DNA of 64,000 nt from the IMG/VR virus record IMGVR_UViG_3300042514_000542, positions 124,001-188,000 of that record, one strand, 5' to 3'. Of this stretch, positions 3,238 through 62,647 are shown piece by piece. How positions within the stretch are numbered: the stretch's first letter is position 1; each line of letters starts with the position of its first letter. A program made the position numbers and the translations under genes. The notes beneath the pieces are model-generated. The model was not told the DNA's origin. It ran no database searches and saw only the letters and a list, made by a program, of their open reading frames with translations.

Positions 3238-3250
3238 GTTAAATAGTATT

Positions 3251-4068: not shown

Positions 4069-4851
4069 ATGGCTTGCCCAACAACACCACTCTCCTGCTT
4101 AGAACCTGTTAATATATTCGCAGGTGTTTATAATCCTCGTTGCGGTGGATTTGCAGACCCCTCAAACTTTCAAGCTGAAAAGGCTGTATTTGCTAGTGGA
4201 TATCAGGAATTGATTAATAACTATGGTGTGGATGTTAATTATTATGTGAATGGGTTTAATTTATCTGCAATGAACCTATTGTATGGTGAACAGCCAACAC
4301 AAGAATATGCTGGACCATTTGTTATTAAGTCTTATCTAGAATTGGAAGAAATGGTATCCTTATCACAGTTCGGTATGTCATCAGACGACGAATTGAAAGC
4401 TTATATAGCTATTAAAGATTTCACAAATTTATTCGCACTGTCTGCTAACGTTTTTTCCAATAATGGTCAAAGAGTCGAACCTAAATCTGATGATTTGATG
4501 GAAATTACAGCACTTGGTTGTGATAGACCCGGAGATAGAGGTTCTAAGATATTTCGAATAACTGAAGTATTAGATCAAAGTGTTCAGGATGGAATTAATC
4601 CAATTATGGGTCATTATATCTGGAAAATCACAGCGAAACGCTATGAGACATCTATGGAAACCAATGCGCCACAAGAATCTGGCAATGATCAGGTGTATGA
4701 TAATACATTCAGTGGTAAATTATCATCTACACTATTCCCAACACTAACTAGCGATGAGAAGGTGTATGATTTCAATATTGATACCATAAGTCAAGAGACT
4801 GTGTATGATATGGATAATACATCAAATAACATCTACGGAGACTATTATTAA
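4069..4851 (+). CDS. 14: Neck/head-closure protein (T4 gp14-like)
   Basis: ELINNYGVDVNYY, LYGE, LSQFGM..DEL, EPKSDDL, IFRITEV, YIWKITAKRYE pattern. Confidence 0.75.
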   Translation: MACPTTPLSCLEPVNIFAGVYNPRCGGFADPSNFQAEKAVFASGYQELINNYGVDVNYYVNGFNLSAMNLLYGEQPTQEYAGPFVIKSYLELEEMVSLSQFGMSSDDELKAYIAIKDFTNLFALSANVFSNNGQRVEPKSDDLMEITALGCDRPGDRGSKIFRITEVLDQSVQDGINPIMGHYIWKITAKRYETSMETNAPQESGNDQVYDNTFSGKLSSTLFPTLTSDEKVYDFNIDTISQETVYDMDNTSNNIYGDYY

Positions 4852-6887
4852 ATCATAGATAATGATTGATATAAGGTATCCAAAATGATATGTTCAAACA
4901 CCCCATTCGTATTGAATAGTGTGGAACTCGTTGAAGATGATAGAATTGATGTTTTTGTGTTATTGAAGTCAACAATACCACCAATTGGAGTATTGTCATA
5001 TACATCGACATAATCAAAGAATAGATAGTATTTTTCAATATCGGAGAAATTAAAAGTTGTGGGTAGGATCAAAGCCCAACCCCAATCAGACGAGTATGTT
5101 GAGAGAGGATATGTATGACTACCCAAAGCTGATACTGGTTGATATGTATTAAGTAATGAATATGTATTACTAAATTTCTCAAGCGCAACAATCGGTCTAT
5201 TGGAACTAACCGTATATGTCACTGTGTCGATCACATTCCCAATATTTACCCCAAATTTATCTTTAGTTGTTCTTCCACGAACGTCAAAATTCTCCCTAAA
5301 TTTATTAAGTTCTCCTATGAGTTTTGATCTATCCATCGACATTAAACCCATTATACGTTTGATTTTATTTGGATATACATAATTCTCTTCTCCATAATTA
5401 TTATAACCAATAGATTCCGCTAGAGAATTTAAAAAATCAATCTCAGAATAATCTAAGTCTTGAGTATTATTAACCATATTTGCAATCTTCTCATACATTT
5501 GCACACCAATAGCATCGTGGTCAGAGTTTTCATCCCCAAATATATCCTTAAAGAACGTCTCAAACAGAACAGTCTTATCCTGAAGAGTTTCTTGAAATCT
5601 TAGATCCATAAGAGTTTGAGTGGGATTAAAATCTTCATTAATCTTCCATAAATCGTAATAATTTTTATTATATACATTGAATTCCGTAGAAATACCACTC
5701 AATGTGTAAGAGGATAATTGATCATTTACGAGTGTCGATGAAACTAGAAGTTGAATTGTTTCCAGTTTATCGAAATTCGTATATGGGAATGTAATATAAC
5801 CCCTAAATGCACCGCCATGGTTCTGTGCAGAGAGAGTATAATTAATAGATGATATACTATATTGAGTGGGATCTAGGATATTTCCTGATGATAAAATAGT
5901 AAAAACTATATCAGACTTTTCAACCGGATTAAAGTTTTTAATTGTGAAGTTATATTGATCCTTAACTTTAACAACAAATGGTATCCTAGTATTGAAGAAT
6001 TTAATAGGATTAATATCAAAAGATGTTATATGTGTTCCGTCACCATCCAAACCATTGGATGTTACTGAAAGATATGCTGGAATGTTGTCAACAATATTTG
6101 CAGATAGGGAAATTTTAAGAAGATTCTGATAATTTGTCGTAGTTGCGTTTTTGATTGCTACATTAGACTTATCGAACCAAGTATCTATAACTACTAAATC
6201 GGATATAGAATCATCTTTATAGTATACATCCTTAGTTCCCGACATCCCAACAAAACATGAACCTGAATCATTATCAGAACAATACTCGATTGTATTATTA
6301 ACCACCCTAGCGTAAATAGAAACCTTTGATGGGACTATCTTATCAATTTCAACATATTGATATGCAGAAATGGAATAATTGTATGTTTTTTCATAAAATG
6401 TATGAAAATTCTCAAGATGTTTAAATTTAAAATTCAAGTTCCAATAATTATCGCTATTATTTCCAATTGATGAATAAAATATATTAGTGTGTTGTTGATA
6501 TGGTGGATAGAAACAATCAATAGTCCACGGTCCATATATCTCACCACACTTAATTTCCGACCCGGTTAAAGTTATAGTGTGGGTAAATGTTATAAAGTCG
6601 TATATCGAAACACTTTTAACGACCGTTGATATCATTGCGTTGTTGTTACAGTCATAAACTATAAGAGATACATTGTATATACCCGGATACTCATAATATT
6701 TTGTGGCTGATATCGAAGTTGATGTCGTACCATCACCAAAATCCCAGACCACCCTACGATGTCTATCTAATTCATTTGAATCTGATATAAATATCATTGG
6801 TGTTATGGGTAACGCAAATGATGAGAGCGCATCCACACCTTTATAATCAATAGAACTGAATCCTATATATGTTGTTGTATTATTCAT
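4848..6887 (-). CDS. PKD-domain baseplate/structural protein
   Basis: WDFGDGTTS...YEYPGIYNVSL PKD motif; coupled to gp6-like gene. Confidence 0.7.
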   Translation of the reverse strand: MNNTTTYIGFSSIDYKGVDALSSFALPITPMIFISDSNELDRHRRVVWDFGDGTTSTSISATKYYEYPGIYNVSLIVYDCNNNAMISTVVKSVSIYDFITFTHTITLTGSEIKCGEIYGPWTIDCFYPPYQQHTNIFYSSIGNNSDNYWNLNFKFKHLENFHTFYEKTYNYSISAYQYVEIDKIVPSKVSIYARVVNNTIEYCSDNDSGSCFVGMSGTKDVYYKDDSISDLVVIDTWFDKSNVAIKNATTTNYQNLLKISLSANIVDNIPAYLSVTSNGLDGDGTHITSFDINPIKFFNTRIPFVVKVKDQYNFTIKNFNPVEKSDIVFTILSSGNILDPTQYSISSINYTLSAQNHGGAFRGYITFPYTNFDKLETIQLLVSSTLVNDQLSSYTLSGISTEFNVYNKNYYDLWKINEDFNPTQTLMDLRFQETLQDKTVLFETFFKDIFGDENSDHDAIGVQMYEKIANMVNNTQDLDYSEIDFLNSLAESIGYNNYGEENYVYPNKIKRIMGLMSMDRSKLIGELNKFRENFDVRGRTTKDKFGVNIGNVIDTVTYTVSSNRPIVALEKFSNTYSLLNTYQPVSALGSHTYPLSTYSSDWGWALILPTTFNFSDIEKYYLFFDYVDVYDNTPIGGIVDFNNTKTSILSSSTSSTLFNTNGVFEHIILDTLYQSLSMI

Positions 6888-13821: not shown

Positions 13822-14735
13822 ACGTCCTCTAAATTCAACAAACATGCAAAGAAATTAATCTCTTTGTCATTAACACGGGTAGCTTTATCCAAATGGTCGG
13901 CAATGGTAATAATCATTGCCTTCTTTTTTGAATCATCTATGGATTGATCGTAAATATAATTCAATAGATCTACTAAAAGTTGCTCCCAATCAGAGTTGAA
14001 CTGTGCATCGTTTGCAATTAGATGCTTTCTAGTCTCCAAGGACTTCTTAGACACTACATTCTTGAAGACCATATCACATAATTGTGAATTGTTGATAGAT
14101 TCTCCAATAGTTAGAACTCCATTCACACAATGCTTCTGTAGTTCACCAATACACTTTCTTAAATCTGGAAATGATTGCTTAACTAGACGAATTACCTGTT
14201 TCTTCTGATCCTGATCAATTTCAACACCTTCAGACTTGAGAATGTTTAAACATCTAATGACTGTATCTCTCAATGTGGATCTTATGTCAAAACTTTGACA
14301 ACGAGATTGGACGGCAACACTAATTTTATGTCTTGAGTTACCAGTTAGAATGAATCTAGCTGAATTAGCATAAGATTCCATAAGATTTCTCAAACATTTT
14401 TGACCATCTATCGTCAAACCATCCGCTTCATCTAAAATGACAAGCTTCAAATTACCATCCAGACTTTTGGTTTGAACGAATCCGGTGACTTTGTTTCGGA
14501 TAGTATCGATACCATTCTCATCGGATGCATTGATATAAAGATAGTCACAATCCAATATAGTCTGAGCTAAAATTCTAGCTAATGTGGTTTTACCCGATCC
14601 GGGTTTACCTATAAATAATAAGTGAGGAATTTCATTACCCCAACTTAAAATTATCTCTCGTAATTCATCTGATATACAGAGATCATCAAGAGTCTGTGGG
14701 CGGTATTTTTCAATCCAAAGGTTGTCGTATCTCAT
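13818..14735 (-). CDS. 44: Clamp loader ATPase subunit (gp44/RFC small subunit-like)
   Basis: LWIEKYRPQ, GKPGSGKTT, INASDENG, ILDEAD, SRC. Confidence 0.95.
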   Translation of the reverse strand: MRYDNLWIEKYRPQTLDDLCISDELREIILSWGNEIPHLLFIGKPGSGKTTLARILAQTILDCDYLYINASDENGIDTIRNKVTGFVQTKSLDGNLKLVILDEADGLTIDGQKCLRNLMESYANSARFILTGNSRHKISVAVQSRCQSFDIRSTLRDTVIRCLNILKSEGVEIDQDQKKQVIRLVKQSFPDLRKCIGELQKHCVNGVLTIGESINNSQLCDMVFKNVVSKKSLETRKHLIANDAQFNSDWEQLLVDLLNYIYDQSIDDSKKKAMIITIADHLDKATRVNDKEINFFACLLNLEDV

Positions 14736-15466
14736 ATCTCTTTCAGAAAGATATCACGATTGGTTCTTTTGTCAAGAGCGCGAACAAATTCGGCACACTC
14801 CAATAGATCGTCATGTGTGCCACAATCAAACCAAACCCCGTCAAATTCATCAACCCCAACACCCTCTTCCAAATCCATAGCACGAATAAGATCAACTATT
14901 TCCAATTCCCCTCTATGTGATGGTCTGATAGTCTTAGCTAGTTCTACAGCTTTATTGGTGAATACATATAATCCTATAACAGCATCATTACTGACAAATG
15001 TTGAAGGTTTTTCAACTAAATGTGAAATACATCCAAATTCATCACATTTAACCACACCATACGCTGATGGATCTTTAACTTTATATGTGAAAATGGTGTT
15101 TGGTTGGGAATTTAATGGACTACCACCCAAAAATACATTATCACCCAATATCAAAGTAACATCATCATCACCAATAAATTCCTCACCTAGAATAAATGCT
15201 TCAGCTAATCCATTAGCCTCTCCTTGTATCACATATTGGATATTGACACCATATTTTTTACCATAATACAAATATCCTAGAAATATATCTAATTGTTCTT
15301 CTGAAGAAACTATAATTAAAATGTCCTTAATACCCATGTCGATCAAAGTCTTCAATGGGTAAAATATCATTGGTTGTTTATACACTGGTAGTAATTGCTT
15401 ACTAATACCATATGTTAATGGATATAGTCTACTACCCTTACCTCCAGCTAAAATTATTCCTTTCAT
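14732..15466 (-). CDS. rmlA: Glucose-1-phosphate thymidylyltransferase
   Basis: KGIILAGGKGSRLYPLT, SKQLLPVY, LGDN, EKP, RGELEI, WFDCGT. Confidence 0.93.
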   Translation of the reverse strand: MKGIILAGGKGSRLYPLTYGISKQLLPVYKQPMIFYPLKTLIDMGIKDILIIVSSEEQLDIFLGYLYYGKKYGVNIQYVIQGEANGLAEAFILGEEFIGDDDVTLILGDNVFLGGSPLNSQPNTIFTYKVKDPSAYGVVKCDEFGCISHLVEKPSTFVSNDAVIGLYVFTNKAVELAKTIRPSHRGELEIVDLIRAMDLEEGVGVDEFDGVWFDCGTHDDLLECAEFVRALDKRTNRDIFLKEI

Positions 15467-16371
15467 ACTCCTCGAACCCCGTTTATACCATTACAAACCA
15501 TATTCAAAATTTCATCTTCTGTGTGTAGTTTACAAATCTTCGATGCCTTAGTATTATTCAATACACAATTACTTCTAGGTGCTGCTATATTGAGTTCATC
15601 GACAGACACCCAATTCGGGTCGAGTTTTCTCCAATTACCCCCATTCATATAATTCAACTTATCTATCACATTATATGTATCCATTGGCTCCGAATTAACC
15701 ACATTGTAAATGTCTTGCCCTAACCAATCCAAACATTTGGTGATGAGAGCTTCTATAAAATTACACAGATCTGGAATATATGTCTTAGAATTTGTGTAAT
15801 TAACAAGATTTGGATATTTCATGATCTTATTAAGATAATTTCTGGGATTATCTAGATCATTACAGATGGGCATCCTAACTCGAACAATCTTATTGTGTAG
15901 GTGGGATGACCCTAACTCAAATGCATGTTTACTTTTACTATAGAAACTGCTATAGTCGAAAAGACCAAAATCTGGAGTGTCTTTTTCGGTATATTCCTTC
16001 AAATATCCACTATATATACATCCTGAAGAGATGTGGATATATCTAATCCCCAATCTATTACATAATGAATTTATCCTAAGCGGCGATAGAACGTTCAACT
16101 CCCAACACTCTGGTTTACGTGATTCAGCTTCATCTACATTTGGCTTTCCAGTAAACCCAGAACAATTAACCACATAATCAATATTGTGATTTAAAAGGTA
16201 TTTCGAAAGTTCCGATAAATCGTGGTAGTTGATGTGTTTACTACTAATAATCTCCACATTAAATTTACCACTATTCGTAAGATAGTGATGTAGGGCTGAT
16301 CCGATATATCCCGAACCCAAAATACAAATTTTATCCTTCAATGGACTCTTCAATAAATTCTCTGATGTCAT
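15463..16371 (-). CDS. NDP-4-keto-6-deoxyhexose epimerase/reductase (RmlD/NRS-ER-like SDR)
   Basis: LGSGYIG, GFTGKPNVD, SSGCIY, YSKSK catalytic motif; start uncertain. Confidence 0.8.
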   Translation of the reverse strand: MTSENLLKSPLKDKICILGSGYIGSALHHYLTNSGKFNVEIISSKHINYHDLSELSKYLLNHNIDYVVNCSGFTGKPNVDEAESRKPECWELNVLSPLRINSLCNRLGIRYIHISSGCIYSGYLKEYTEKDTPDFGLFDYSSFYSKSKHAFELGSSHLHNKIVRVRMPICNDLDNPRNYLNKIMKYPNLVNYTNSKTYIPDLCNFIEALITKCLDWLGQDIYNVVNSEPMDTYNVIDKLNYMNGGNWRKLDPNWVSVDELNIAAPRSNCVLNNTKASKICKLHTEDEILNMVCNGINGVRGV

Positions 16372-16621: not shown

Positions 16622-19294
16622 ATGGCACTATCAATTCAACTTGGATATCCAGATGTCCCTAAGTCAATAACAAATCCGAACGTTAAATTACATGACGCTT
16701 TGGATGTTGACGGACCGATATCATTTTTGGAGTTCATCAAAACAATTAATACATCATTTGAACCCGACACCCTACAAAAATATTATAATTTTTATTTGAC
16801 GACTTGGAGTAATAAAAATTCTAATAAGAATACTGACGCTCAAGATCTAATTGTAGAGAATTATAGGACATTTATAAAAGAGGTCGCCATAAACTATACA
16901 ACCAACGAAGAGAAACAATTCCTTAAGTCTATTGATTTCGATGATGAGTTTGATATGGATGTGATTTTAGGTTTCTATAGCAAAAAACTATTGGAATTAT
17001 CATCACTGTATAATAAGAAGAGAACGGATGTTAAGTTTGGCATAACTAGGAATAAACTTAGAGGAACAAATATCGGAATCAGTAAGGAAATTATTGAAAC
17101 CACACTATCGTATCTAAAAAACTTAGAGGGTGGTAAAATTTTATTCGACTATGATTTGATAAAATCTAGATTAGAGGTTGAAATAAGTGAATTATACGAC
17201 GGATATGCCTATTACTTCAATCAAATTCCAAATACGGCAATTTACGACAATAAAGACTTGGATTATGGTTATGATATTTTCTTAAAGGATAATACCACCC
17301 TAATTTCAGAAATTTTTAGTGGATTGTCTGAAGAAATGAGAGATCTGAAAGAGGTTAATGACCTATTTGATAATAAAAGGAAACTCACAGAAAAATACAT
17401 ATCTACAGATTTTTATTACTTATCGACTGGAAATACCACTTCGGAATTTCTATCAGGTAAATTATTTTCATCAGATAATCAATCAGCCAATTTTAAAAAT
17501 CGCAAATTTCCAACTACTGCATCGACACCCAGAACTGAAAACTTAGTAGATAAGAGAGATGTTGGGTTCTTTAAGCCTTGTAAACACGCTATTATAACTC
17601 TTGATGGAACTTCCAAGGGGTTCGCATTCAATTTTGAAAATCTAGAACCAAACTCTCTATATTATTTTCCAGATCCCACAATAACAGGGGATAATGGAGA
17701 TGTAATAACATTTATTATAGATGATAGTCAAATTAAAAAGAACTACTCTTCAGGAATCGCAGCGAATCAACCGAATAGTTCAGATAGAGACACTCAATAT
17801 TTCGGATATGTCACAAAGACACCACCAGTGCCTCAAAAATATCTCGACTATGTGTTCAACTCAGGGTTTGTTCAAGACTTAAAGTATGATATTTTTGGTA
17901 ACACATTTGGTTTATTTAAAGATGATCATAGACATAAGAAAACTATAAAATTTTTACCGGACACCGATATCTACAATGTAGTGTTTAATGGGTATCAATT
18001 TTACGATGGTCTATATAATGAATATCTATCATTCAACTATCAAACAAGTGATAGTGTAACTTATAATGAAACCATTAGAAGTGGATTATCTTCCAATACA
18101 TCAGGATTTACGAACTTCCAATCGGATGTAGTGGCATCATTCGGAGTATTCTCACCTTATAATGAGATAGTAGAATCAACTGAAAATGTAACTACATATA
18201 GAATACTTGAAGGCGCATTTATATCTAAAGATGATTTTTCACTATACCCAGAAGTATCGTCAGATTTATCGGCTTTTGAAATATCAACAACTCCAATGTA
18301 TTACACTGTCTTGATTGAAGGTGGTATAGCGGATATCAACCCTCTTCAACGAGCATTAAACGACCCCCTATACCCAAATCTGAGTGCTGATTTAACAGAA
18401 TTCATACAAACATCGGCTATATCTATCGTTGATGGTGGGTTTTTCGAAGACGGTTCGGATTTCAATATATCTATAACACCCAACGACTATGTATTTTTTC
18501 CCGATGTTGAAAATACCACAACATATACCCTAACCACAACGCCATACGATTCGGATTATGATTTAAATGGTCAAATTTACGTTAAAAATTACTCAAATAA
18601 GACCATTTATACATTATCTGAAATGCTTCCATATTTATCCAATAAATACTCCTCTGGTGTATTGGATGAATTGAATACTAATGTGATTAGGTTCGATATT
18701 GCCAACGATGTAATGTTTTTCGAAACCCCATCATACCTTATAATTGATAGGGTACTTATGAATGATGGAGTGTTTGTAGACCCCAGAACTGCTCCGATAA
18801 CGATAGTTACGGGTGATGAATATAGTAAAATATCCAATAGATTCAGAGTCAACCAAACAGTCTATTACTGTAATACTAAAACTCAAACACCCGCCATATC
18901 ATCTAATAATTTTATAGTATATCCAGAGATATACGCATTCGATCTAGTTAATTTTAGAAATAATAAAATATTCCCACTCGATGAAGCCGATATAACTACC
19001 TTCTTTAGTATATCTGGTGATGGTGTTAGATATACCTATCTGGATAGTCCAATACTGACCTATAGTAGTAAAAACAATATCTTTAACCTCTCATTTTTAA
19101 TGAAAGACCAAAACGATATGCCTAGATTGCATCAGTTGGATTTCTATCTTAACCCAAACATATCATTTAGTTCCCATACTATTCACAATTTTTCACCCTT
19201 CTCAAAGTCATACACCCTATCGTCTATAAACAATCTATCCCTATACTTATCTGGGGGTAATATAACATATGTTGGGGAAGAACTTATACTATGA
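16622..19294 (+). CDS. Large baseplate/tail structural protein
   Basis: 890 aa, late promoter, N/S/T/Y-rich, first gene of the tail cluster. Confidence 0.6.
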   Translation: MALSIQLGYPDVPKSITNPNVKLHDALDVDGPISFLEFIKTINTSFEPDTLQKYYNFYLTTWSNKNSNKNTDAQDLIVENYRTFIKEVAINYTTNEEKQFLKSIDFDDEFDMDVILGFYSKKLLELSSLYNKKRTDVKFGITRNKLRGTNIGISKEIIETTLSYLKNLEGGKILFDYDLIKSRLEVEISELYDGYAYYFNQIPNTAIYDNKDLDYGYDIFLKDNTTLISEIFSGLSEEMRDLKEVNDLFDNKRKLTEKYISTDFYYLSTGNTTSEFLSGKLFSSDNQSANFKNRKFPTTASTPRTENLVDKRDVGFFKPCKHAIITLDGTSKGFAFNFENLEPNSLYYFPDPTITGDNGDVITFIIDDSQIKKNYSSGIAANQPNSSDRDTQYFGYVTKTPPVPQKYLDYVFNSGFVQDLKYDIFGNTFGLFKDDHRHKKTIKFLPDTDIYNVVFNGYQFYDGLYNEYLSFNYQTSDSVTYNETIRSGLSSNTSGFTNFQSDVVASFGVFSPYNEIVESTENVTTYRILEGAFISKDDFSLYPEVSSDLSAFEISTTPMYYTVLIEGGIADINPLQRALNDPLYPNLSADLTEFIQTSAISIVDGGFFEDGSDFNISITPNDYVFFPDVENTTTYTLTTTPYDSDYDLNGQIYVKNYSNKTIYTLSEMLPYLSNKYSSGVLDELNTNVIRFDIANDVMFFETPSYLIIDRVLMNDGVFVDPRTAPITIVTGDEYSKISNRFRVNQTVYYCNTKTQTPAISSNNFIVYPEIYAFDLVNFRNNKIFPLDEADITTFFSISGDGVRYTYLDSPILTYSSKNNIFNLSFLMKDQNDMPRLHQLDFYLNPNISFSSHTIHNFSPFSKSYTLSSINNLSLYLSGGNITYVGEELIL

Positions 19295-19785: not shown

Positions 19786-19793
19786 ATAATATT

Positions 19794-22163
19794 GTGGTAT
19801 CTGTAGTCAACATATCTGCGATGAATTCCAATAGTTTAAGTTCTAACTTAAACGGATTTACATTTAAGCAATTTAAAAGAAACTATCCGGGAAATTATAC
19901 TATAAATTTTGCCCATAGTTTATCGTCGTTTAATGATTTCCAAATTAAAAACTATACTAATTTCTACCTAACCAACGATTATAAAATTAGTGATATATTT
20001 GATTTCGATACAACTCCCCTAAAAGCATCTTCTATTCACACGCCCATATTATGGGGAAGTGGGTATTTATCATTTTCAGGTATAGACTCGGAAGCATATG
20101 CCTTAGCCAACAGATACCATGAGAGTAAGAATTACGGTGTTGCCATTATCGGTGAAACCGAATCTTCGCTCTCCATAGATATACTTGATAATAATATATG
20201 TAATATTTATCACACCAAAAATTATCAAAAGTTTTTTCTTGTAGTTGATGATACAAATTCTTTGGTTTTTGTGAAACAGAATTTGTTATCAACTGACCCA
20301 ATGGTGGTTAAACCTCAAGATTTTCATTATCTATTTTCTGAAAATGGTAATTTATTCTATCTGTTTAAAAAAACCTCAACTGGGACAAATATTGTGACCG
20401 TTGTTGATGGAGAACCGTTAGTCACTCCTGTTCTCAACAATAATACATCCTATATTAATTGGTTTTTTAAAATCGAAAAAAGTATCTACTCATACCCCAC
20501 CAAAAATCTAAACACATCATTCATAACCTATGATACGAATAATATGTTGGATAAGGATAAGAGTGATTTCGAATTATCAAATAACCTACTATTACATAAA
20601 AAAATATCTAGCGATGTTACAGACGTTATCATTCTAAAAAATCAATTATTACAGAATAATATATATTCATCTTCAAACAATCTATTATCTGGATTTAATA
20701 AGAATATATTTGTAAATGAGTTGAGAGAATATACCTCTATTGGAAATTCTATAGATTCAGAGACATCTGAGGCATTAGATTTGAATTATGTATTTTACAA
20801 TAAACCTTATAAAATTGTAACTGGTAGTAATATATTTTATAGTTCGTCAAGCATAGAACCATTCACACAGTTGAATATAAATGATACAAAATTTATAGAG
20901 GCTGGTGCATTTCCATACCTAACACCGGAATTTTCAGATAGAGTCTATCATCTATCAAATGATACCAATAACTATGATAATGGTCAACATTTACTATGTA
21001 CTTGGCTTTCTGGTTCACCCTTCCTCAATAATAGTGTATGGGTTGATAGGTATTATTATCCGAATCTAATCGAGAAATCCGAAGCATTAGCTGGATCGTC
21101 CACTCTATCTATAACGTATGATGATTATATTGAGGTTCTGGTGAATAGTAATTCACAGAAAAAGGAAAATATAAAAATACAGAAATTTTTTGACAAGAAA
21201 AGCGATCTAGTCTTTACCCCAAATCAAAAATACAACTATGAGAGAATCTCACAAATAGGTGTCGAATCGTTGTCGTCAAATTATTCATATTGTCAGACAA
21301 CTTTGAGTGCATACCCAACAAACTATTTCAAAGATATAAACACCAGTGGTGAAGTGAGTGTTGCATTTACGTTCTTTGGCGATGATTCAAGTTGGACAAT
21401 TCAAAGTGATAGAGGATATATAGACTCTGGAATATCTATAATCAAAACTAATAACAAGATTACAATAACTTGTAAATTCTATGATGCCACAACAAGAGAT
21501 TTTAGCGGAGAATGGTTTTCCTTTAGTAAGACCCTAGATATCAAGAGCTTAAAGACTAATAATTTATGCGTATCGGTAGATGTTAAGTTGGGTATTGGAT
21601 ATTTCTTCTTTAATAATGAAATTGTCTACAATTTTACGCTACCCCAATATCAATTACTAGGTAAAGATATCATTCATGGAGACTTTAAATATATTAAAGA
21701 ACAAACTTATGATTTATTATATGATGAAATAAATGGAATTTCAAATGTTTTTATAAATGATCTATACATAACCCCCGAACGAGCATTTTTAATTTTTACT
21801 CTTAATAGTAACGGGATTGACGATATTTATATAACACTACCATGTGGAATGAGGAACAGTGTTGATGATATAGCATACCTGAACAGTGTATGTGGAACAT
21901 CAACATTTAAATCAAACTATATTGATATTGAACTAAAAAATATTGGTATAACCGATGACTCAATCATAAATGATTTAAAATTAATTATCTCAGATATTGG
22001 TGAGAAGAATCTACCAGCATCAACGACCATCAATGATATAAAATTCAATGATTATAGGAAAATGAAACCCAATGCTGATACTATTACGGTTCCACCATAT
22101 GCACTAGTGTATAATGGAAACCTTATTACATATAATGGTATTGTCATTATATCAACACCTTAA
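19794..22163 (+). CDS. Tail/baseplate structural protein
   Basis: GTG start after TAAATA-N5; CTWLSG, WVDRYYYP. Confidence 0.6.
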   Translation: MVSVVNISAMNSNSLSSNLNGFTFKQFKRNYPGNYTINFAHSLSSFNDFQIKNYTNFYLTNDYKISDIFDFDTTPLKASSIHTPILWGSGYLSFSGIDSEAYALANRYHESKNYGVAIIGETESSLSIDILDNNICNIYHTKNYQKFFLVVDDTNSLVFVKQNLLSTDPMVVKPQDFHYLFSENGNLFYLFKKTSTGTNIVTVVDGEPLVTPVLNNNTSYINWFFKIEKSIYSYPTKNLNTSFITYDTNNMLDKDKSDFELSNNLLLHKKISSDVTDVIILKNQLLQNNIYSSSNNLLSGFNKNIFVNELREYTSIGNSIDSETSEALDLNYVFYNKPYKIVTGSNIFYSSSSIEPFTQLNINDTKFIEAGAFPYLTPEFSDRVYHLSNDTNNYDNGQHLLCTWLSGSPFLNNSVWVDRYYYPNLIEKSEALAGSSTLSITYDDYIEVLVNSNSQKKENIKIQKFFDKKSDLVFTPNQKYNYERISQIGVESLSSNYSYCQTTLSAYPTNYFKDINTSGEVSVAFTFFGDDSSWTIQSDRGYIDSGISIIKTNNKITITCKFYDATTRDFSGEWFSFSKTLDIKSLKTNNLCVSVDVKLGIGYFFFNNEIVYNFTLPQYQLLGKDIIHGDFKYIKEQTYDLLYDEINGISNVFINDLYITPERAFLIFTLNSNGIDDIYITLPCGMRNSVDDIAYLNSVCGTSTFKSNYIDIELKNIGITDDSIINDLKLIISDIGEKNLPASTTINDIKFNDYRKMKPNADTITVPPYALVYNGNLITYNGIVIISTP

Positions 22164-22232
22164 ATAAATAATATCATATCGAATATATCTAGGTCAGGTA
22201 AGCACCGCCAACTAATAATGAAAAGAATTTAA

Positions 22233-23999: not shown

Positions 24000-24021
24000 A
24001 CAATCACGTTAAATAAACATA

Positions 24022-24843
24022 ATGAGTACTTTCACTAATCAATTCATTTTAAACACATACGGTGGTATATTACACTCAGATGGAGAGTTGAATATTTCCC
24101 AGAAATCGATCATGTATGACGGATTCGGTAACGAATCCGCATTAACATTGGGTCGAAAAAATAATGGGGCTAGTGTTAGTGGTAATTTATCATCAACATC
24201 TTTAAATGTCGGACAATTAACTTTCCCGTCTCTTTCAAGTGATGTCAATAACGTGTTGATACAAAAGGCCGATGGAATTGTGGATTTTTCTGACACCATA
24301 CCATCATCTCTACTCGCAGATCTAAACCCAAATCCAGAAAATGTATATAATACTATAAAGTCCATTACTGTAAATTCTAAAGGTCTTACGACAAAAGTTG
24401 ATACTTGGGGGAGTTCAAATAATACCATAACATCCACAACCTATAAAGAAAATGCTGGAACACCATTTTCAGTAGTCACCGTAACTGCCGATGTATGGAC
24501 AAAGGTGTTTTTAACGGACGCTATACCACCAGAAGATGTTTCTAGCGTTAAAGCTGTTATACTATACGTTGAACCTACAGGTAATTTAGCCGCATATAGA
24601 AAATCATATACGCTAGTTGCATCTCCAAATCAAAGTGATGTGTATCCAATATATCAAGTCATTGGTGGTGAAGATGCGGGGGGTGGAAACGATACTTACG
24701 GTATAGGTGTTCAATGTTCCGTCCGTATTGGAGGAATTGGAACAAATTCAATATACATATACCTTAAAAACCCCATCACAAAAAGTAACTCCGATAATGC
24801 GACTTACTCATTTAATGTTCATTTAATAGCTTATCAACGATAA
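24022..24843 (+). CDS. Tail fibre-like protein
   Basis: DGFGNESALTL; ITVNSKGLTT fibre-shaft motif. Confidence 0.6.
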   Translation: MSTFTNQFILNTYGGILHSDGELNISQKSIMYDGFGNESALTLGRKNNGASVSGNLSSTSLNVGQLTFPSLSSDVNNVLIQKADGIVDFSDTIPSSLLADLNPNPENVYNTIKSITVNSKGLTTKVDTWGSSNNTITSTTYKENAGTPFSVVTVTADVWTKVFLTDAIPPEDVSSVKAVILYVEPTGNLAAYRKSYTLVASPNQSDVYPIYQVIGGEDAGGGNDTYGIGVQCSVRIGGIGTNSIYIYLKNPITKSNSDNATYSFNVHLIAYQR

Positions 24844-24844
24844 T

Positions 24845-25867
24845 ATGCCAAATATAGAAATAGCTAAGTTAAAAACAAGAAGAGGCACGAATAATCAAAG
24901 AAAACGTGTCATCTTTGACCAAGGGGAAATTGTATCTACCGTTGATACTAATAGATTATTCCTTGGAACCGGAACGTTGAGTGGCGGTGTTGTGATAGGT
25001 TCGAAAGTTCATCAACCTATCACTAATTATTCATCATTATCAAATATCGCAGCCGAAGTTGGTGATTTAGCATATGCTAATAATATATTTTACCAGTTAA
25101 CGGCATCACCACCATCAAATATCAACAATTGGATGTCTACTGGAATTAAACTAGACAGTGGATTATTCTCGTATGATTCAGATAATACACTTAGATTAAA
25201 TCTATCCTCTCTATCGGCAGTGCATATCAATCCACTAACCGTATCGAATGGAATTAAGATATCTGGTGGGATTCTTCAAAGCAATTTTAATACAAAATCT
25301 TTAGAAATTTCATCATATCAATTATCCCTAAAGGCTAATGGTATAGATGAAAGAGAGCTAAACTCGACAACTTTTGGTTACGGAATTAGTGGGGGATCAG
25401 GAACTAAAGTAGTTCTGGACGTAAATCCATCACAGTTTCGTTTCAATGGTGATACCCTAAATCTCACGAATTCTACATCCATATCCGCAGTAGATAATTC
25501 ATCATTAATTCTAAGCTCTGGTGTAATATCAGTAAATAATAATGGGGCTTCTGGTAGTTATCAATGGCCAAGAATTGTAGTGGATACTTTCGGTAGAGTG
25601 ACTACAGCAGAATCATCAATATTAGATGTTTTAACAGGTAATGCATCTCTATCAAGCTATAACCGTAATAATTCACTCTCCGCAATATATAATGGTGATT
25701 CTATGGGATTATCATCTATAGCAATAACGAGATTTACTGCACTATCATCCGATGGAACAAGCATTATACATCTTTCATCTGCTGGGTTTATAACATTCGA
25801 AGGAGGGACCACAACAAGGAGTGGAACTTCCGTTGGAAGATTCGCAATCCCAATTTATAGATATTAA
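24845..25867 (+). CDS. Tail fibre protein with Mtd_N-like N-terminal domain
   Basis: RRGT..R....DQGEI....DTNRLFLGTG; VDTFGRVTTA shaft motif. Confidence 0.7.
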   Translation: MPNIEIAKLKTRRGTNNQRKRVIFDQGEIVSTVDTNRLFLGTGTLSGGVVIGSKVHQPITNYSSLSNIAAEVGDLAYANNIFYQLTASPPSNINNWMSTGIKLDSGLFSYDSDNTLRLNLSSLSAVHINPLTVSNGIKISGGILQSNFNTKSLEISSYQLSLKANGIDERELNSTTFGYGISGGSGTKVVLDVNPSQFRFNGDTLNLTNSTSISAVDNSSLILSSGVISVNNNGASGSYQWPRIVVDTFGRVTTAESSILDVLTGNASLSSYNRNNSLSAIYNGDSMGLSSIAITRFTALSSDGTSIIHLSSAGFITFEGGTTTRSGTSVGRFAIPIYRY

Positions 25868-25870
25868 TAT

Positions 25871-26731
25871 ATGGAAATTCTCAACAATACAATTATTAAA
25901 TTAATAGTCCGTCAAGGTGCAAATACTGATCGAAAGTATATTCTTTTGAATTCTGGCGAACCCGCATTTACGACAGATACTCATAGATTTTATGTAGGGA
26001 CTGGTATATTGAGTGGTGGTGTTGTTGTTGGAAATAAATACCAAGGGTCTTCCACAGATGTTACTGGATTTACATCTGCTGTAAATGGAGATGATGCATA
26101 TGATTCCGATAAACACAAACTTTATAAAGTAATTAATGATACTGACACCACTCAACTCTCGAATTGGGAGTATGTTGGGGGTGTTTACTCTTCTGGTGAT
26201 AATTATATTGAAATAAGTAGCGATAATCAGATATCTCTGAATGCGTTATCCGCCAATGCCTTATCTAATGACTTAGTGAAAGGTCCAATTATCTTAGATT
26301 CTGGAAGAATCTCATTATCTGCGACAATTCCTTATCAATCAGTATCTACAAAAACTATAACTATATCTAATGGTTTAAAAGCCACTATTAATGGATTAAG
26401 TGTTACTGGAAACGCAGTTAATGTGTTATCATCCAATCTAGTAGTATCAACCAAGCAATTATTTGCGAGATATAATGGTGTAACCCAAACACTGACAAAC
26501 TATCAGAATATTTCTTCTGTTAACTGGTTATCAGCAGGTCATTATGTGTTCAATTTCGAACCAGTTCTCAGTAATTCCAATTATGTCCCCTTAACGCAAA
26601 TAATTGGAATTAACGGTCTAGGATATCATTCTAGAGTTATATCAACAACCATTTCATCATGTCATGTGGTGATATTGAGTACTAATGAGGCAAAAACCGA
26701 TGTAGATTTATCTCTATTGATTAATTATTAA
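25871..26731 (+). CDS. Tail fibre protein with Mtd_N-like N-terminal domain (paralog of preceding gene)
   Basis: RQGANTDR...GEPAFTTDTHRFYVGTG.LSGGVVVGNK; C-terminal SAGHYVFNF. Confidence 0.7.
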   Translation: MEILNNTIIKLIVRQGANTDRKYILLNSGEPAFTTDTHRFYVGTGILSGGVVVGNKYQGSSTDVTGFTSAVNGDDAYDSDKHKLYKVINDTDTTQLSNWEYVGGVYSSGDNYIEISSDNQISLNALSANALSNDLVKGPIILDSGRISLSATIPYQSVSTKTITISNGLKATINGLSVTGNAVNVLSSNLVVSTKQLFARYNGVTQTLTNYQNISSVNWLSAGHYVFNFEPVLSNSNYVPLTQIIGINGLGYHSRVISTTISSCHVVILSTNEAKTDVDLSLLINY

Positions 26732-26732
26732 T

Positions 26733-27452
26733 ATGTCATTCCCTTCCGATGTTTTATTACCAGTAAATGCGAAATATTTTGGAATTATAGAACCTGATTA
26801 CGCATTCAACCCACATTGGGACTTAACTTGGAGTTTTTCATATGCATTGACTGGAACTGAGCATGGTATCTGTACTTTTCTCTGTGATAATTCAACTGTA
26901 ACATCACCACCCGGACACTATATTGGTTATGGTGGGCTAAGTGCGTCTAAATTTGTATTAGGTGTTGCGTTGGATTCAACTGGGCTTTTCGCATTATCTA
27001 CTAATTACTCTTCAGGTGTCCCCCGTTCGCAAATAAAAAGAGATAGTCTCATTATAAGAGATCAAACCAATAATGTAATTTTTAATCAGTCGCTTTCTAC
27101 ACTGGACTCAACCTTTAACATAGCTACATCAGCGAAAGAATATAAGACAATTCGAATTCGCTACTCCAATGTGGGTAGGAAGATCTATATAGACTATAAA
27201 ATTGGCGATACTAAGTATATAAATCTCACTAGTATTAGTCATATTTCACTAGACACATCAACATACGAAAATCTTTATGTTGGTTTATCATATTCGTCAC
27301 CTATTTCAAGTAGTTCCATAACACCATCAAAAATATGGGTCAAGAACTTCCACATTCAAGGTAATATCGAAAACCCTACATATAATACATTGGCATACAC
27401 ACCGATTTCATCAAATGTAGTTAATTCATTCTCGTCAATTAACATATTCTAA
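26733..27452 (+). CDS. Putative ConA/L-type lectin-fold receptor-binding protein
   Basis: GICTFL...IGYGG...LGVALDSTG...TIRIRY...IYIDY...LYVGLSYS beta-sandwich pattern. Confidence 0.55.
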   Translation: MSFPSDVLLPVNAKYFGIIEPDYAFNPHWDLTWSFSYALTGTEHGICTFLCDNSTVTSPPGHYIGYGGLSASKFVLGVALDSTGLFALSTNYSSGVPRSQIKRDSLIIRDQTNNVIFNQSLSTLDSTFNIATSAKEYKTIRIRYSNVGRKIYIDYKIGDTKYINLTSISHISLDTSTYENLYVGLSYSSPISSSSITPSKIWVKNFHIQGNIENPTYNTLAYTPISSNVVNSFSSINIF

Positions 27453-27551
27453 CACTTTCGGGATTTGTTCAAGGTATAACTAGTCAATCATTTTATAATA
27501 ATTTAATTCACTCTGATGCTTTCGTCACTAGACAAGCATTAAATAACAGAA

Positions 27552-27899
27552 ATGTCTTCTTCTTCTTCTTCGTCTTCCAGTTCTTCCACACCTCCAGTAA
27601 CATTACCACCACCGGTAACACCACCACCGGTAAATTTTGAGTGTACTCCGTGTTATCCACCTATTCCATCCACACCAGAATTCCCACCGAATTTTACACT
27701 ACCGACAACCAAAACAGCACAGCCAGAATTTATTATAACAACACCACCCCCACCAGTTAACCCTCTAACTATAAGTATAAACATAACTACTACTTCAACT
27801 ACAACAACTCAAATAGTGACACCACCAGTGACACTACCACCACTGATAACCCCATCAGTGAAAGAATGTAATGATGGTTGCAATGCTCTAAATTTTTAG
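27552..27899 (+). CDS. Mucin-like Ser/Thr/Pro-rich protein
   Basis: Poly-Ser N-terminus, TPPVTLPP twice, TTTSTTTT, 4 Cys; TAAATA-N6-ATG. Confidence 0.75.
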   Translation: MSSSSSSSSSSSTPPVTLPPPVTPPPVNFECTPCYPPIPSTPEFPPNFTLPTTKTAQPEFIITTPPPPVNPLTISINITTTSTTTTQIVTPPVTLPPLITPSVKECNDGCNALNF

Positions 27900-27909
27900 T
27901 AATTACTCC

Positions 27910-28740
27910 ATGAGGAATCTAACAATTGGAATGGCAACGCATGATGATTTCGATGGGTTGTATTTCACAATTCAAAATATACGTTTGAATCATAAAGAAA
28001 TCTTAGATAAGATAGAATTTGTTATTATTGATAATAATCCAAATAGTAAACATGGTAAGAGTATTCGAAACTTTATGCAATGGATAAAGGAACCCGTCCA
28101 ATATCTTCCCTTCACTAAGTTTCAATCCACTACAGTTAAAAACAAAGTATTCGAACTGGCAGATACGCCATATGTTCTATGTATAGATTCCCATGTTCTA
28201 TTAGAACAAGGTTCTTTGAAAAAACTCATAAATTTCTACGAAAGTGGTAAAGATTATGGTAATTTACTACAAGGTCCATTAGTATATGATGATATGGAAA
28301 ATATTAGCAGTCACTTCGATCTAACTAAATGGGGTGGCAATATGTGGGGTCAATGGGGGTCAGATGATAGGGCTAAAAATCCAAATAATGAACCCTTTGA
28401 AATCCCAGCACAAGGTATGGGTCTTTTTTCCTGCCGTAAAGATGCTTGGTTAGGTTTTAATAAGGAATTTAGAGGATTTGGTGGTGAAGAAGGTTATATT
28501 CACGAAAAATATCGTAAAAATGGTAAAAAAGTTATATGTTTACCCTTTTTACGATGGGTTCATAGGTTTGATCGACCAAATGGAACCACGTATCCAAACA
28601 TTTTGGAGGATAGGTTTCGAAATTATTACATAGGGTTTAAAGAACTTGGTCTTGATACCACAGAACTCTTTGAAAACTTTCCAGAGTTTTCTAATACCGA
28701 AAATCTCAATAAATTAGACTTAGAAATATCCAAATTTTAG
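27910..28740 (+). CDS. GT-A glycosyltransferase with polypeptide GalNAc-transferase-like motifs
   Basis: VIIDN, LCIDSH (DxH), MGLFS, GFGGEE, WVHRF. Confidence 0.8.
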   Translation: MRNLTIGMATHDDFDGLYFTIQNIRLNHKEILDKIEFVIIDNNPNSKHGKSIRNFMQWIKEPVQYLPFTKFQSTTVKNKVFELADTPYVLCIDSHVLLEQGSLKKLINFYESGKDYGNLLQGPLVYDDMENISSHFDLTKWGGNMWGQWGSDDRAKNPNNEPFEIPAQGMGLFSCRKDAWLGFNKEFRGFGGEEGYIHEKYRKNGKKVICLPFLRWVHRFDRPNGTTYPNILEDRFRNYYIGFKELGLDTTELFENFPEFSNTENLNKLDLEISKF

Positions 28741-37517: not shown

Positions 37518-37598
37518 GTATATATTTAGTAATCCGAGTCGTTTCTTCTTCAATTAAATTTGTTAATAGGTCAATAAGATCTGATGACGGGTCGTAAT

Positions 37599-61918: not shown

Positions 61919-62647
61919 ATGAGGATAGCAATATCAGGCACGGCAAATTCCGGTAAAACTACATTAATCGATGCATTTAAAAATCGATGGCCGATGTATA
62001 CAACACCATCGAAGACATATAGAGATGTAATTAAGGAGAATAATTTAGAACATTCATCCAATACAAATGACGATTCACAATTGTTAATTCTAAATTGGAT
62101 GATGGAGGAGCAGAAAAAGTATAATAAAGATTCGTATGTCATCTATGATAGATGTCCATGGGATAATTTAGCATATACATTACAGGGAAATGCATTAGAT
62201 AAAATTTCAGATACAGTTACAGCCGCAACTATTTCCTTTGTTAAGGAATCCATGAAGGATCTTGATATTATTTTCTGGCTGAAGTATAATCCAGCTATTA
62301 AAGTCGTAGAAGATGGGCTTAGAGATGCTAATGAAGCATATATCAAACAAACAGATCAGGTATTCCAAGGATTATTTGATCAGTATATGGATAATCTTGA
62401 AGAGGACGTATTCTACCCGAAAGATGACTGCCCTGCAATCGTTTGTATCGATGAACACTTTTCTACAGTTGATGATAGATTAATGTTTATTGGTGAATTT
62501 TTAGACCGTAAAGGTGATTTGATTGATGGGGAGAGTATGCTATCCGAAGAAAACCTGTCGATCTTAGAAGGAATTTTAGGTGATCAAGGTCGTGAAAAGG
62601 AAAACGAAGATAGAATTAATAAAATCATTAAAGAATTTAAGAAATGA
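61919..62647 (+). CDS. P-loop nucleotide kinase-like protein (AAA_28/dNMP kinase-like)
   Basis: IAISGTANSGKTT, YDRCPWD, EDGLR. Confidence 0.75.
   Translation: MRIAISGTANSGKTTLIDAFKNRWPMYTTPSKTYRDVIKENNLEHSSNTNDDSQLLILNWMMEEQKKYNKDSYVIYDRCPWDNLAYTLQGNALDKISDTVTAATISFVKESMKDLDIIFWLKYNPAIKVVEDGLRDANEAYIKQTDQVFQGLFDQYMDNLEEDVFYPKDDCPAIVCIDEHFSTVDDRLMFIGEFLDRKGDLIDGESMLSEENLSILEGILGDQGREKENEDRINKIIKEFKK

What the first reader, a model, noticed from the sequence alone, without database searches (positions are those of the whole stretch)
24022..27452. Recurrent [LI]-S-[AGS] tripeptide in tail fibres: possible glycosylation sequon
Seen in sequence: 24845-25867 alone has LSGG, LSSLSAV, ISGG twice, ISSY, ISAV, LSSG, LSSY, LSAI, LSSI, LSSD and LSSA. 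The motif is also dense in 25871, 26733, 24022 and 4848, and looks rare in the replication proteins. Inference: a selected acceptor motif on exposed virion proteins for one of the phage GTs.
Basis: inference. Interest (0 to 1): 0.6.

Follow-up and report, generated by a model that had tools for sequence, protein, structure and literature searches.

The report
Leu-Ser-small motif in phage tail proteins
The outer tail and fibre proteins of this uncultured marine T4-like phage use the tripeptide Leu/Ile-Ser-Ala/Gly/Ser three to five times more often than chance; it most likely marks where short beta-strands end and the chain turns, and a sugar-attachment role is possible but unproven.

Summary
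[LI]-S-[AGS] is enriched in 24845-25867 (13 seen, 2.8 expected) and 25871-26731 (8 vs 1.5). It is also enriched in 4848-6887, 16622-19294 and 19794-22163. It is not enriched in 24022-24843 or 26733-27452. The bias is directional (the reversed motif is about 1x), Ser-specific, acts at the amino-acid level and survives local-composition shuffles. It is absent from T4 fibres and weak in cyanophage baseplate giants. It recurs in proteins with no detectable sequence similarity to each other, and in every relative examined. Orthologues keep the motif 43% of the time, against 7-28% for control tripeptides.

The cause is not settled. The structural reading fits best: a buried Leu/Ile ends a strand, and Ser plus a small residue start a turn or a one-turn helix. 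The excess sits in columns shared between genomes. The sequon idea gains a candidate enzyme: the conserved neighbour 27910-28740 folds most like polypeptide GalNAc-transferases. However, enrichment is equally strong in relatives with no such gene nearby (3.45x vs 3.78x). Mass spectrometry is needed.

The parts
24022..24843 (+). 273-aa distal tail protein. Its N-terminal ~100 aa are shared with a counterpart in a related phage that ends in a T4 gp10 C-terminal domain. The C-terminal part is different here. Not motif-enriched (2 vs 1.2).
   Evidence: weak ESM Atlas lead to the T4 gp9/10 N-terminal family
24845..25867 (+). 340-aa fibre protein. It has an Mtd_N-like N-terminus, a middle of short beta-hairpin repeats and a conserved C-terminal domain. 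It carries 13 [LI]S[AGS] sites.
   Evidence: Pfam Mtd_N 19.7 bits, below cut-off; 223 metagenomic homologues, most carrying PF18454; AF2 pLDDT 75 with hairpin repeats; weak Foldseek hits to reovirus sigma1, Mtd and adenovirus shaft
25871..26731 (+). 286-aa paralogue of the previous fibre (31% identity over 226 aa), with an Mtd_N-like N-terminus and 8 motif sites.
26733..27452 (+). 239-aa protein resembling L-type (legume) lectins; a likely carbohydrate-binding tip or accessory protein. Not significantly enriched here (3 vs 1.6).
   Evidence: ESM Atlas feature score 0.95 with 190 shared features, structure TM 0.69-0.79
27552..27899 (+). 115-aa ORF of unknown function between the lectin-like gene and the glycosyltransferase. 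It has no motif sites.
27910..28740 (+). 276-aa soluble GT-A glycosyltransferase. It has an invariant D93-S-H95 directly after strand 88-93. Its closest solved folds are polypeptide GalNAc-transferases. It is a conserved neighbour of the fibre genes.
   Evidence: Pfam PF00535; A2 alignment invariants; AF2 pLDDT 91.8; Foldseek top 50 all ppGalNAc-T, E 4.6e-14; VIA-align Z 22.8 and 22.0 vs 18.4 for the next family; 65-73% identity across 5 phages
16622..19294 (+). 890-aa tail or baseplate protein of unknown family, motif-enriched (9 vs 2.2). BLASTP finds no similarity to the fibres.
19794..22163 (+). 789-aa tail or baseplate protein of unknown family, motif-enriched (8 vs 2.75).
4848..6887 (-). 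679-aa PKD-domain virion protein next to the gp6-like baseplate wedge gene, motif-enriched (10 vs 2.0).
14732..16371 (-). Two overlapping genes: RmlA-like glucose-1-phosphate thymidylyltransferase (14732-15466) and RmlD-like reductase/epimerase (15463-16371). They make nucleotide-sugars and lie just upstream of the tail module.
62644..64000 (+). Start of a cluster of GT2-like genes that runs beyond the window, to genome position ~193.4 kb.

Best explanation
[LI]-S-[AGS] is a local chain-reversal signature that these proteins use very often. An inward-facing Leu/Ile is the last buried residue of a short beta-strand. The Ser hydroxyl caps the backbone at the strand end. The small residue that follows lets the chain turn, either into the second strand of a hairpin or into a one-turn helix. 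The second case resembles a Ser N-cap with a hydrophobic staple between position 0 and position +5.

The distal tail proteins of this phage lineage are built from many such short strands, so the tripeptide piles up and is kept by purifying selection. Shown: the enrichment, its direction, its conservation, and its placement in one predicted model. Inferred: the capping role of Ser.
For: - In the AF2 model of 24845-25867, four sites (139, 155, 223, 300) place the Leu/Ile or Ser as the last strand residue before a turn. Two more (123, 269) sit directly before short helical turns.
- The middle of that protein is a run of strand-turn-strand units, with weak fold matches to triple beta-spiral fibres and Mtd.
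- Around 219 sites, position -1 is depleted of hydrophobic residues (0.21 vs 0.36). Position +5 is enriched for them (0.47 vs 0.36, z 3.3).
- Chance predicts about 66 sites across 5 genomes, and about 67 sites are singletons. The excess of about 155 therefore sits in columns shared by 2-5 genomes.
- In 54 family members, 8 conserved columns hold 57% of all instances, and L310-S311-S312 is invariant.
- Enrichment does not depend on the neighbouring glycosyltransferase: 3.78x with it, 3.45x without.
Against: - T4 fibres and baseplate proteins are equally beta-rich and show no enrichment, roughly 16 sites seen and expected, my tally of the per-protein figures. Cyanophage baseplate giants show only 1.2-1.7x. 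'Fibres are like that' is therefore not enough.
- The bias appears in at least five proteins with no BLASTP similarity to each other.
- Val is not favoured at the first position. N or D at the centre are not enriched in the window proteins, although a pure turn cap should tolerate them.
- About a third of sites carry Thr exactly at -5 (71 of 211, against 8% background). Sites with Thr at the centre share this, but sites with N or D at the centre do not. This looks more like a linear motif with a hydroxyl requirement.
- The structural context rests on one monomer model of pLDDT 75. No coordinates were available, so exposure and hydrogen bonds could not be measured.
Confidence: 0.5

Rival explanations
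1. The motif, possibly in the longer form T-x4-[LI]-[ST]-[AGS], is an O-glycosylation acceptor. A phage-encoded cytoplasmic glycosyltransferase modifies the Ser on distal tail proteins. The prime candidate is the ppGalNAc-T-like enzyme at 27910-28740, fed by the phage's nucleotide-sugar genes and perhaps extended by the GT2 cluster.
For: - The bias is directional, Ser-specific and at the amino-acid level, in several proteins with no detectable similarity to each other. It is absent from T4.
- The motif is kept in orthologues 43% of the time, against 7-28% for control tripeptides, and Thr is the commonest replacement for Ser.
- The GT next to the fibres is 65-73% identical across phages whose fibres are only 23-58% identical.
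- Its best solved folds are protein O-GalNAc transferases, covering the whole chain, with a DxH at the canonical metal site.
- It is found in 41 of 79 related loci.
- The genome also has RmlA-, RmlD- and dehydratase-like genes and 6-8 GT2-like ORFs.
- All genes from 16622 to 28740 lie on one strand with small gaps.
Against: - Enrichment is the same in fibre homologues with and without the GT in the locus.
- The whole tail module stays enriched in four loci with no GT within 6-10 kb.
- A 150-kb record (73% complete) has no homologue of this GT, and two 70-80-kb fragments have no GT2 at all.
- The excess lies in columns shared between genomes, including a site inside a long predicted strand.
- No Pro enrichment appears near the sites. 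ppGalNAc-T acceptors usually have nearby Pro (general knowledge).
- Fold similarity does not show substrate, and HMMER finds no sequence link to solved GalNAc-Ts.
- The only documented phage virion glycosylation is on C-terminal tails of capsid and tail tube subunits (as summarised in PMC12619734).
- GTs beside tail fibres in pelagimyophages have been read as host-surface modifiers (PMC7029224).
Confidence: 0.2
2. The motif is a short linear recognition element for some other partner, for example a fibre or baseplate assembly chaperone, or another Ser/Thr modification. It would be read on the unfolded or partly folded chain.
For: - Thr sits at an exact spacing of -5, while the four residues between it and the Leu/Ile have no consistent pattern.
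- The motif is shared by tail proteins with no detectable similarity to each other but is at chance level in the rest of the proteome.
- It is independent of the GT.
Against: No candidate partner was identified. No known chaperone or modification motif of this form is known to me. Positional conservation and strand-end placement are explained more simply by structure.
Confidence: 0.1
3. The signal is an artefact of composition, local low complexity, a DNA-level repeat or shared ancestry.
For: The proteins are Ser-rich (10-16% Ser). Homologues are not independent samples.
Against: - The reversed motif is at 1.0-1.2x in the same proteins.
- Shuffles within 15-residue windows still give p <= 0.001 for four of the five enriched proteins (0.012 for 19794-22163).
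- The 54 sites use 48 distinct 9-mers, and all Ser codon families appear in background proportions.
- The enriched proteins share no BLASTP similarity apart from the two paralogues.
Confidence: 0.03

Closest known systems
Bordetella phage BPP-1 Mtd and other fibres with the Mtd_N N-terminal domain (PF18454)
   Same: An N-terminal segment of about 35 residues matches Mtd_N. The gene sits at the distal end of the tail module. Foldseek finds Mtd variants with probability 0.93-0.96.
   Different: Pfam scores are below the gathering threshold in the window copies (19.7 and 21.6 vs 26.3 bits). TM-scores are low. No C-type-lectin variable domain or diversity-generating retroelement was seen or looked for.
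Triple beta-spiral shafts of the adenovirus fibre and reovirus sigma1
   Same: There is a run of short strand-turn-strand units with small or Gly residues in the turns. These shafts are the top, though weak, Foldseek matches. One homologue has a faint avian adenovirus fibre Pfam hit.
   Different: Best E-value is 1.8e-3 and TM about 0.13 on a monomer model. The trimer was not modelled. The Ser preference is not a described feature of those repeats.
Helix N-cap with hydrophobic staple, and beta-hairpin turn caps (general protein-structure motifs)
   Same: A hydrophobic residue is followed by Ser and then a small residue, with a second hydrophobic residue five positions after the first. Sites fall at strand ends or before helical turns.
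   Different: Such motifs give only about 1.3x enrichment in the rest of this proteome. They do not explain the Thr at -5 or the absence of the bias from T4.
Polypeptide N-acetylgalactosaminyltransferases (CAZy GT27)
   Same: They are the best structural match over the whole 276 residues: Z 22.8, rmsd 3.1 A, 259 residues aligned. There is a DxH at the GT-A metal site.
   Different: There is no ricin-type lectin domain, no membrane anchor and no detectable sequence similarity. Donor and acceptor are unknown.
Mycobacteriophage virion glycosylation (Freeman et al. 2023, as summarised in PMC12619734)
   Same: Phage-encoded glycosyltransferases act on the phage's own structural proteins.
   Different: There the glycans sit on C-terminal tails of capsid and tail tube subunits. 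Here the motif is spread through folded regions of distal tail proteins, and no modification has been shown.
Host recognition cluster of pelagimyophages (PMC7029224)
   Same: These are marine T4-like phages in which tail-fibre genes, proteins with Mtd and concanavalin-like domains, and glycosyltransferases lie together.
   Different: That paper proposes the GTs modify the host O-chain. It reports GT8 as the commonest family and describes no sequence motif. Neither the fibre nor the GT of this window matches any record in the phage collection searched.

Membership tests
Mtd_N-type phage fibre (PF18454) | N-terminal Mtd_N domain above Pfam's gathering score | tested here: inconclusive
   19.7 and 21.6 bits against a cut-off of 26.3 in the two window proteins. 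Most of the 120 listed homologues carry a precomputed PF18454 hit.
Mtd_N-type phage fibre (PF18454) | Position in the distal tail module | tested here: met
   The order PKD protein, ~890 aa, ~164 aa, ~750 aa, ~590 aa, adaptor, fibre, fibre recurs in four related phages, partly in one. gp6- and gp25-like genes lie nearby.
Triple beta-spiral fibre shaft | Trimeric shaft of repeating strand-turn-strand units with Gly/Pro turns | tested here: inconclusive
   Hairpin repeats appear in the monomer model. Foldseek matches to sigma1 and the adenovirus shaft are weak. Trimer not modelled.
Protein O-glycosylation sequon | Sugar demonstrated on the motif Ser | not testable with these tools
   Needs glycoproteomics.
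Protein O-glycosylation sequon | Motif density follows the presence of the modifying enzyme | tested here: not met
   3.78x with the GT in the locus and 3.45x without. The module stays enriched in loci without the GT. No GT homologue in a 150-kb, 73%-complete relative. Caveat: the records are incomplete.
Protein O-glycosylation sequon | Acceptor residues are solvent-exposed | not tested
   No model coordinates were available. Only DSSP strings were returned.
GT27 polypeptide GalNAc-transferase | GT-A catalytic fold most similar to ppGalNAc-T | tested here: met
   Foldseek top 50 hits are all ppGalNAc-T. Against 48,161 cluster representatives, Z is 22.8 and 22.0, against 18.4 for the next family.
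GT27 polypeptide GalNAc-transferase | DxH metal-binding motif at the end of strand beta4 | tested here: met
   D93 and H95 are invariant in 38 sequences, directly after strand 88-93. That DxH typifies GT27 is from general knowledge.
GT27 polypeptide GalNAc-transferase | Detectable sequence membership | tested here: not met
   phmmer and hmmsearch against PDB sequences find no GalNAc-T, even at E up to 10 for residues 150-240. Pfam gives only PF00535.
GT27 polypeptide GalNAc-transferase | C-terminal ricin-type lectin domain and type II membrane anchor | tested here: not met
   The protein is 276 aa, the catalytic fold spans residues 1-276, and it starts directly with strand 4-10.
Mycobacteriophage-type virion glycosylation | Acceptor sites on C-terminal tails of capsid and tail tube subunits | tested here: not met
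   Sites are dispersed through the proteins. No capsid, sheath or tube protein is among the genome's significantly enriched genes.

The most novel reading that the evidence does not exclude
A widespread uncultured lineage of marine T4-like phages O-glycosylates its own baseplate and fibre proteins in the cytoplasm. The acceptor would be a defined sequon, T-x4-[LI]-[ST]-[AGS] or its LS[AGS] core. The enzyme would be a compact phage glycosyltransferase with a polypeptide-GalNAc-transferase fold. Relatives that lack that gene would use another transferase.
Probability: 0.2. Interest if true: 0.8.

Novelty: new member of a known kind. Interest (0 to 1): 0.45.

Why it matters
If the motif is structural, it is a useful sequence signature for an abundant, uncultured family of marine phage tail proteins. 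It is also a reminder that a strong motif bias need not mean modification.

If it is a sequon, it would be the first defined acceptor motif for phage virion glycosylation and the first case on tail fibres. It would also tie a GalNAc-transferase-like fold to a bacterial virus. That would bear on host recognition, on how phages mask their fibres, and on why marine T4-like phages keep glycosyltransferases beside their fibre genes.

Either way the question can now be tested directly, with one fibre gene and one enzyme gene.

Tried and rejected
- DNA-level motif: rejected. The 54 sites use 48 distinct 9-mers, and Ser codon use matches background.
- Local composition: rejected by 30- and 15-residue window shuffles and by the reversed-motif control.
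- General property of T4-type fibres: rejected. T4 gp34-37, gp7, gp9-12 and wac are at about 1x. P-SSM5 and S-RIM8 baseplate giants are at 1.7x and 1.2x.
- A shared repeat domain among the enriched proteins: no BLASTP similarity apart from the two paralogues.
- An N-x-S/T sequon hidden in the motif: Asn is not enriched at -1.
- T4 late promoter TATAAATA, as a test of co-expression: 9 matches against 13 expected, so uninformative.
- Cultured relatives: none for the fibre region (blastn and tblastn) or for the GT. PHROGs gave nothing for the fibre genes.
- Sequence link between the GT and solved structures: none.
- Co-variation of motif density with the adjacent GT: tested and not found.
- Literature search for GT27-like enzymes or O-glycosylated tail fibres in phages: nothing relevant.

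Not used: reads tools, another genetic code, complex prediction and the large representative search. No contig looked human.
Full report
**Setting.** The window is positions 124001-188000 of a 206,590-bp IMG/VR virus record. The record has about 30-41% G+C in 2-kb windows. It is a distant T4-like myovirus. It has a gp6-like baseplate wedge (phrog_219, E 4.7e-45), gp25-like, T4-type terminase, gp32, gp44 and DnaB-like genes. Its DNA polymerase is only about 30% identical to those of cyanomyophages. Neither the finding region nor its proteins match any of 50,697 phage records in the collection searched.

**The genes in the finding.** Four co-directional genes fill 24022-27452.
- 24845-25867 (340 aa) and 25871-26731 (286 aa) are paralogues, 31% identical over 226 residues. 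Both have an Mtd_N-like N-terminus that scores below Pfam's cut-off.
- The 340-aa protein belongs to a family of at least 223 metagenomic proteins, all unnamed.
- Its AlphaFold model (54-sequence alignment, pLDDT 75) has a middle section of strand-turn-strand units. It gives only weak Foldseek matches, to reovirus sigma1, Mtd, the adenovirus shaft and other phage fibres.
- 24022-24843 shares only its first ~100 residues with the counterpart in a related phage, which ends in a T4 gp10 C-terminal domain.
- 26733-27452 resembles L-type lectins in the ESM Atlas.
- After a 115-aa ORF comes a 276-aa glycosyltransferase at 27910-28740.

**Is the motif real?** Yes, in part.

| Gene | Seen | Expected | p |
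|---|---|---|---|
| 24845-25867 | 13 | 2.85 | 0.0003 |
| 25871-26731 | 8 | 1.52 | 0.0003 |
| 4848-6887 | 10 | 1.98 | 0.0003 |
| 16622-19294 | 9 | 2.18 | 0.0003 |
| 19794-22163 | 8 | 2.75 | 0.004 |
| 24022-24843 | 2 | 1.2 | 0.33 |
| 26733-27452 | 3 | 1.6 | 0.21 |

These figures are against within-protein shuffles, and the enrichment survives shuffling within 15-residue windows. The tail module 16622-27452 has 48 sites against 14.5 expected. The 34 genes of 28994-56919 have 14 against 15.5.

- A scan with no prior motif ranks LS as the top dipeptide, and LSA and LSS as the top tripeptides, by a wide margin.
- The bias is directional. In the five enriched proteins [LI]S[AGS] is at 4.2x and the reversed [AGS]S[LI] at 1.2x.
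- It is residue-specific. Thr at the centre is at 0.6x, Asn 1.1x and Asp 1.2x, and Val at the first position is at 1.0x.
- It is not a DNA repeat. The 54 sites use 48 distinct 9-mers, and all Ser codons appear in background proportions.
- Apart from the two paralogues, the enriched proteins share no BLASTP similarity.
- A sixth case lies outside the window. A 364-aa protein at genome 197748-198842, which I take from its N-terminal sequence to be gp48/gp54-like (not tested), has six sites in its C-terminal 135 residues.

**Controls from other phages.** T4 long and short fibres, fibritin and baseplate proteins show no enrichment. By my tally of that output, about 16 sites are seen and about 16 expected. 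The first 4,108 and 6,309 residues of the giant baseplate-adjacent proteins of cyanophages P-SSM5 and S-RIM8 are at 1.7x and 1.2x. The bias is therefore not a general property of T4-type fibres.

**Relatives.** Four related phage loci share the gene order of the tail module, at 23-58% identity.
- Over eight orthologous groups in five genomes, the forward motif occurs 221 times against 66 expected. The reversed motif occurs 66 times against 67.
- About 67 sites are unique to one genome, which is what chance predicts. The excess therefore lies in columns shared by two to five genomes.
- In a 54-member alignment of the fibre family the motif is at about 4x (546 vs 134). Eight conserved columns hold 57% of instances, and L310-S311-S312 is invariant.
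- Orthologues keep the motif at an aligned site 43% of the time, against 7-28% for thirteen control tripeptides of the same degeneracy. The Ser is kept 63% of the time, and Thr is its commonest replacement at 10%.
- The motif is therefore under purifying selection and largely fixed in position.

**Local context.**
- In the model, four sites (139, 155, 223, 300) have the Leu/Ile or Ser as the last strand residue before a two-residue turn. Two (123, 269) lie directly before short helical turns. One (310) lies inside a long strand of the conserved C-terminal domain. The rest are in coil or low-confidence loops.
- Around 219 sites, position -1 avoids hydrophobic residues (0.21 vs 0.36), and position +5 favours them (0.47 vs 0.36).
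- Leu outnumbers Ile 167 to 52.
- Unexpectedly, Thr sits exactly at -5 in 71 of 211 sites, against an 8% background. This holds for sites with Thr at the centre (26%). It does not hold for sites with Asn or Asp at the centre (7%), nor for partial motifs (12-13%).
- The four residues between that Thr and the Leu/Ile show no pattern. I cannot explain this coupling.

**The glycosylation idea.** The genome has the machinery. It encodes RmlA- and RmlD-like genes at 14732-16371 and a 4,6-dehydratase-like gene at genome 111041-111829. It has about 6-8 GT2-like ORFs, most of them in a cluster from window 62644 onwards. It has no RmlC or GT1.

The GT beside the fibres stands out.
- It has no paralogue in the genome.
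- It is 65-73% identical across phages whose fibres have diverged to 23-58%.
- It has 2,679 metagenomic homologues and none in the phage collection searched.
- Its model is confident (pLDDT 91.8).
- The 50 best Foldseek matches in the PDB are all polypeptide GalNAc-transferases, best E 4.6e-14.
- A Foldseek-independent comparison with 48,161 cluster representatives puts mouse GalNAc-T1 first (Z 22.8, rmsd 3.1 A, 259 of 276 residues) and Toxoplasma GalNAc-T3 second (Z 22.0). The next family, chondroitin polymerase, is four units lower at 18.4.
- D93 and H95 are invariant directly after strand 88-93, the position of the GT-A metal motif. A DxH there is typical of ppGalNAc-Ts, from general knowledge.
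- It lacks a lectin domain and a membrane anchor. HMMER finds no sequence link to solved GalNAc-Ts.

So it works like a soluble protein-O-GT candidate, but it cannot be filed as a GT27 member.

**Does the motif follow the enzyme?** I fetched 80 IMG/VR loci around fibre homologues of 29-60% identity. I scored each fibre for the motif and each locus for the GT.

| Loci | Distinct fibres | Seen / expected | Ratio |
|---|---|---|---|
| GT in locus | 28 | 273 / 72 | 3.78x |
| At least 6 kb downstream held, no GT | 11 | 81 / 23.5 | 3.45x |

- In four loci without the GT, the other tail-module proteins are enriched too.
- The 150-kb record behind L055 (73% complete) has no homologue of this GT but does have four other GT2 genes. 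Fragments of 70-80 kb behind L065 and L080 have no GT2 at all.
- One apparently GT-less group probably has the gene just beyond the flank, as L082 shows.
- The records are incomplete, so absence is not proven. Still, the prediction that motif density tracks this enzyme was tested and not met.

**Verdict.**
- I give 0.5 to the structural reading: a strand-ending or turn-starting element used very often in this lineage's distal tail proteins.
- I give 0.2 to the sequon.
- I give 0.1 to another recognition role.
- Artefact is essentially excluded.
- The remainder is for mixtures or causes I have not thought of.

The structural and sequon readings do not exclude each other, because exposed strand ends could be both caps and acceptors.

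Published context: glycosyltransferases beside tail-fibre genes are known in pelagimyophages, where they were read as host-surface modifiers (PMC7029224). Phage virion glycosylation is documented for mycobacteriophage capsid and tail tube C-termini (summarised in PMC12619734).

**Limits.**
- No model coordinates were available, so exposure and hydrogen bonds of the motif Ser could not be computed.
- The fibre trimer was not modelled.
- Homologous sequences are not independent samples. The strongest independent evidence is the recurrence of the bias in proteins with no detectable similarity to each other.

Noticed in passing
window 27910-28740: A compact 276-aa phage glycosyltransferase whose confident model matches polypeptide GalNAc-transferases better than any other solved family. 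It has an invariant DxH. It has 2,679 metagenomic homologues and none in the phage collection searched.
   Followed up: yes
window 16622-27452 and loci L007, L008, L010, L011: Thr occurs exactly five residues before the Leu/Ile of the motif in about a third of sites (71 of 211, against an 8% background). This holds for sites with Ser or Thr at the centre but not for Asn or Asp. The intervening residues show no pattern. Unexplained.
   Followed up: partly
window 26733-27452: The last gene of the fibre cluster resembles L-type (legume) lectins in the ESM Atlas by both features and structure. It may be a carbohydrate-binding receptor-recognition protein.
   Followed up: partly
window 24022-24843 vs L007:9374-9997: Counterpart genes share only the N-terminal ~100 residues. 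The L007 protein ends in a T4 gp10 C-terminal domain (E 4.7e-20) and the window protein does not. This looks like a C-terminal module swap.
   Followed up: partly
window 14732-16371; genome 111041-111829: RmlA-like and RmlD-like genes sit between the clamp-loader gene and the tail module. A 4,6-dehydratase-like gene lies elsewhere in the genome. No RmlC was found, so the sugar made may not be rhamnose.
   Followed up: partly
window 62644-64000 and on to genome ~193.4 kb: A cluster of about six GT2-like ORFs. A similar cluster of four lies about 30 kb from the fibres in the record behind L055.
   Followed up: partly
genome 197748-198842 (outside the window): A 364-aa protein that I take from its N-terminal sequence to be gp48/gp54-like (not tested) carries a C-terminal extension with six motif sites in 135 residues.
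   Followed up: no
window 3236-4063: ORF with an ART-PolyVal ADP-ribosyltransferase domain (E 1.5e-12), near the terminase gene.
   Followed up: no
window 35012-35770 and 36669-37553; genome 104456-105469: Two GIY-YIG/NUMOD3 homing-endonuclease-like ORFs lie beside the gp32-like gene. Elsewhere in the genome is an ORF that looks LAGLIDADG-like by eye. It has four motif sites, which shows that a non-virion protein can also score.
   Followed up: no
genome 10474-10923 (outside the window): A 149-aa Leu/Ser/Thr-rich ORF with four motif sites. It may be a spurious frame rather than a gene.
   Followed up: no
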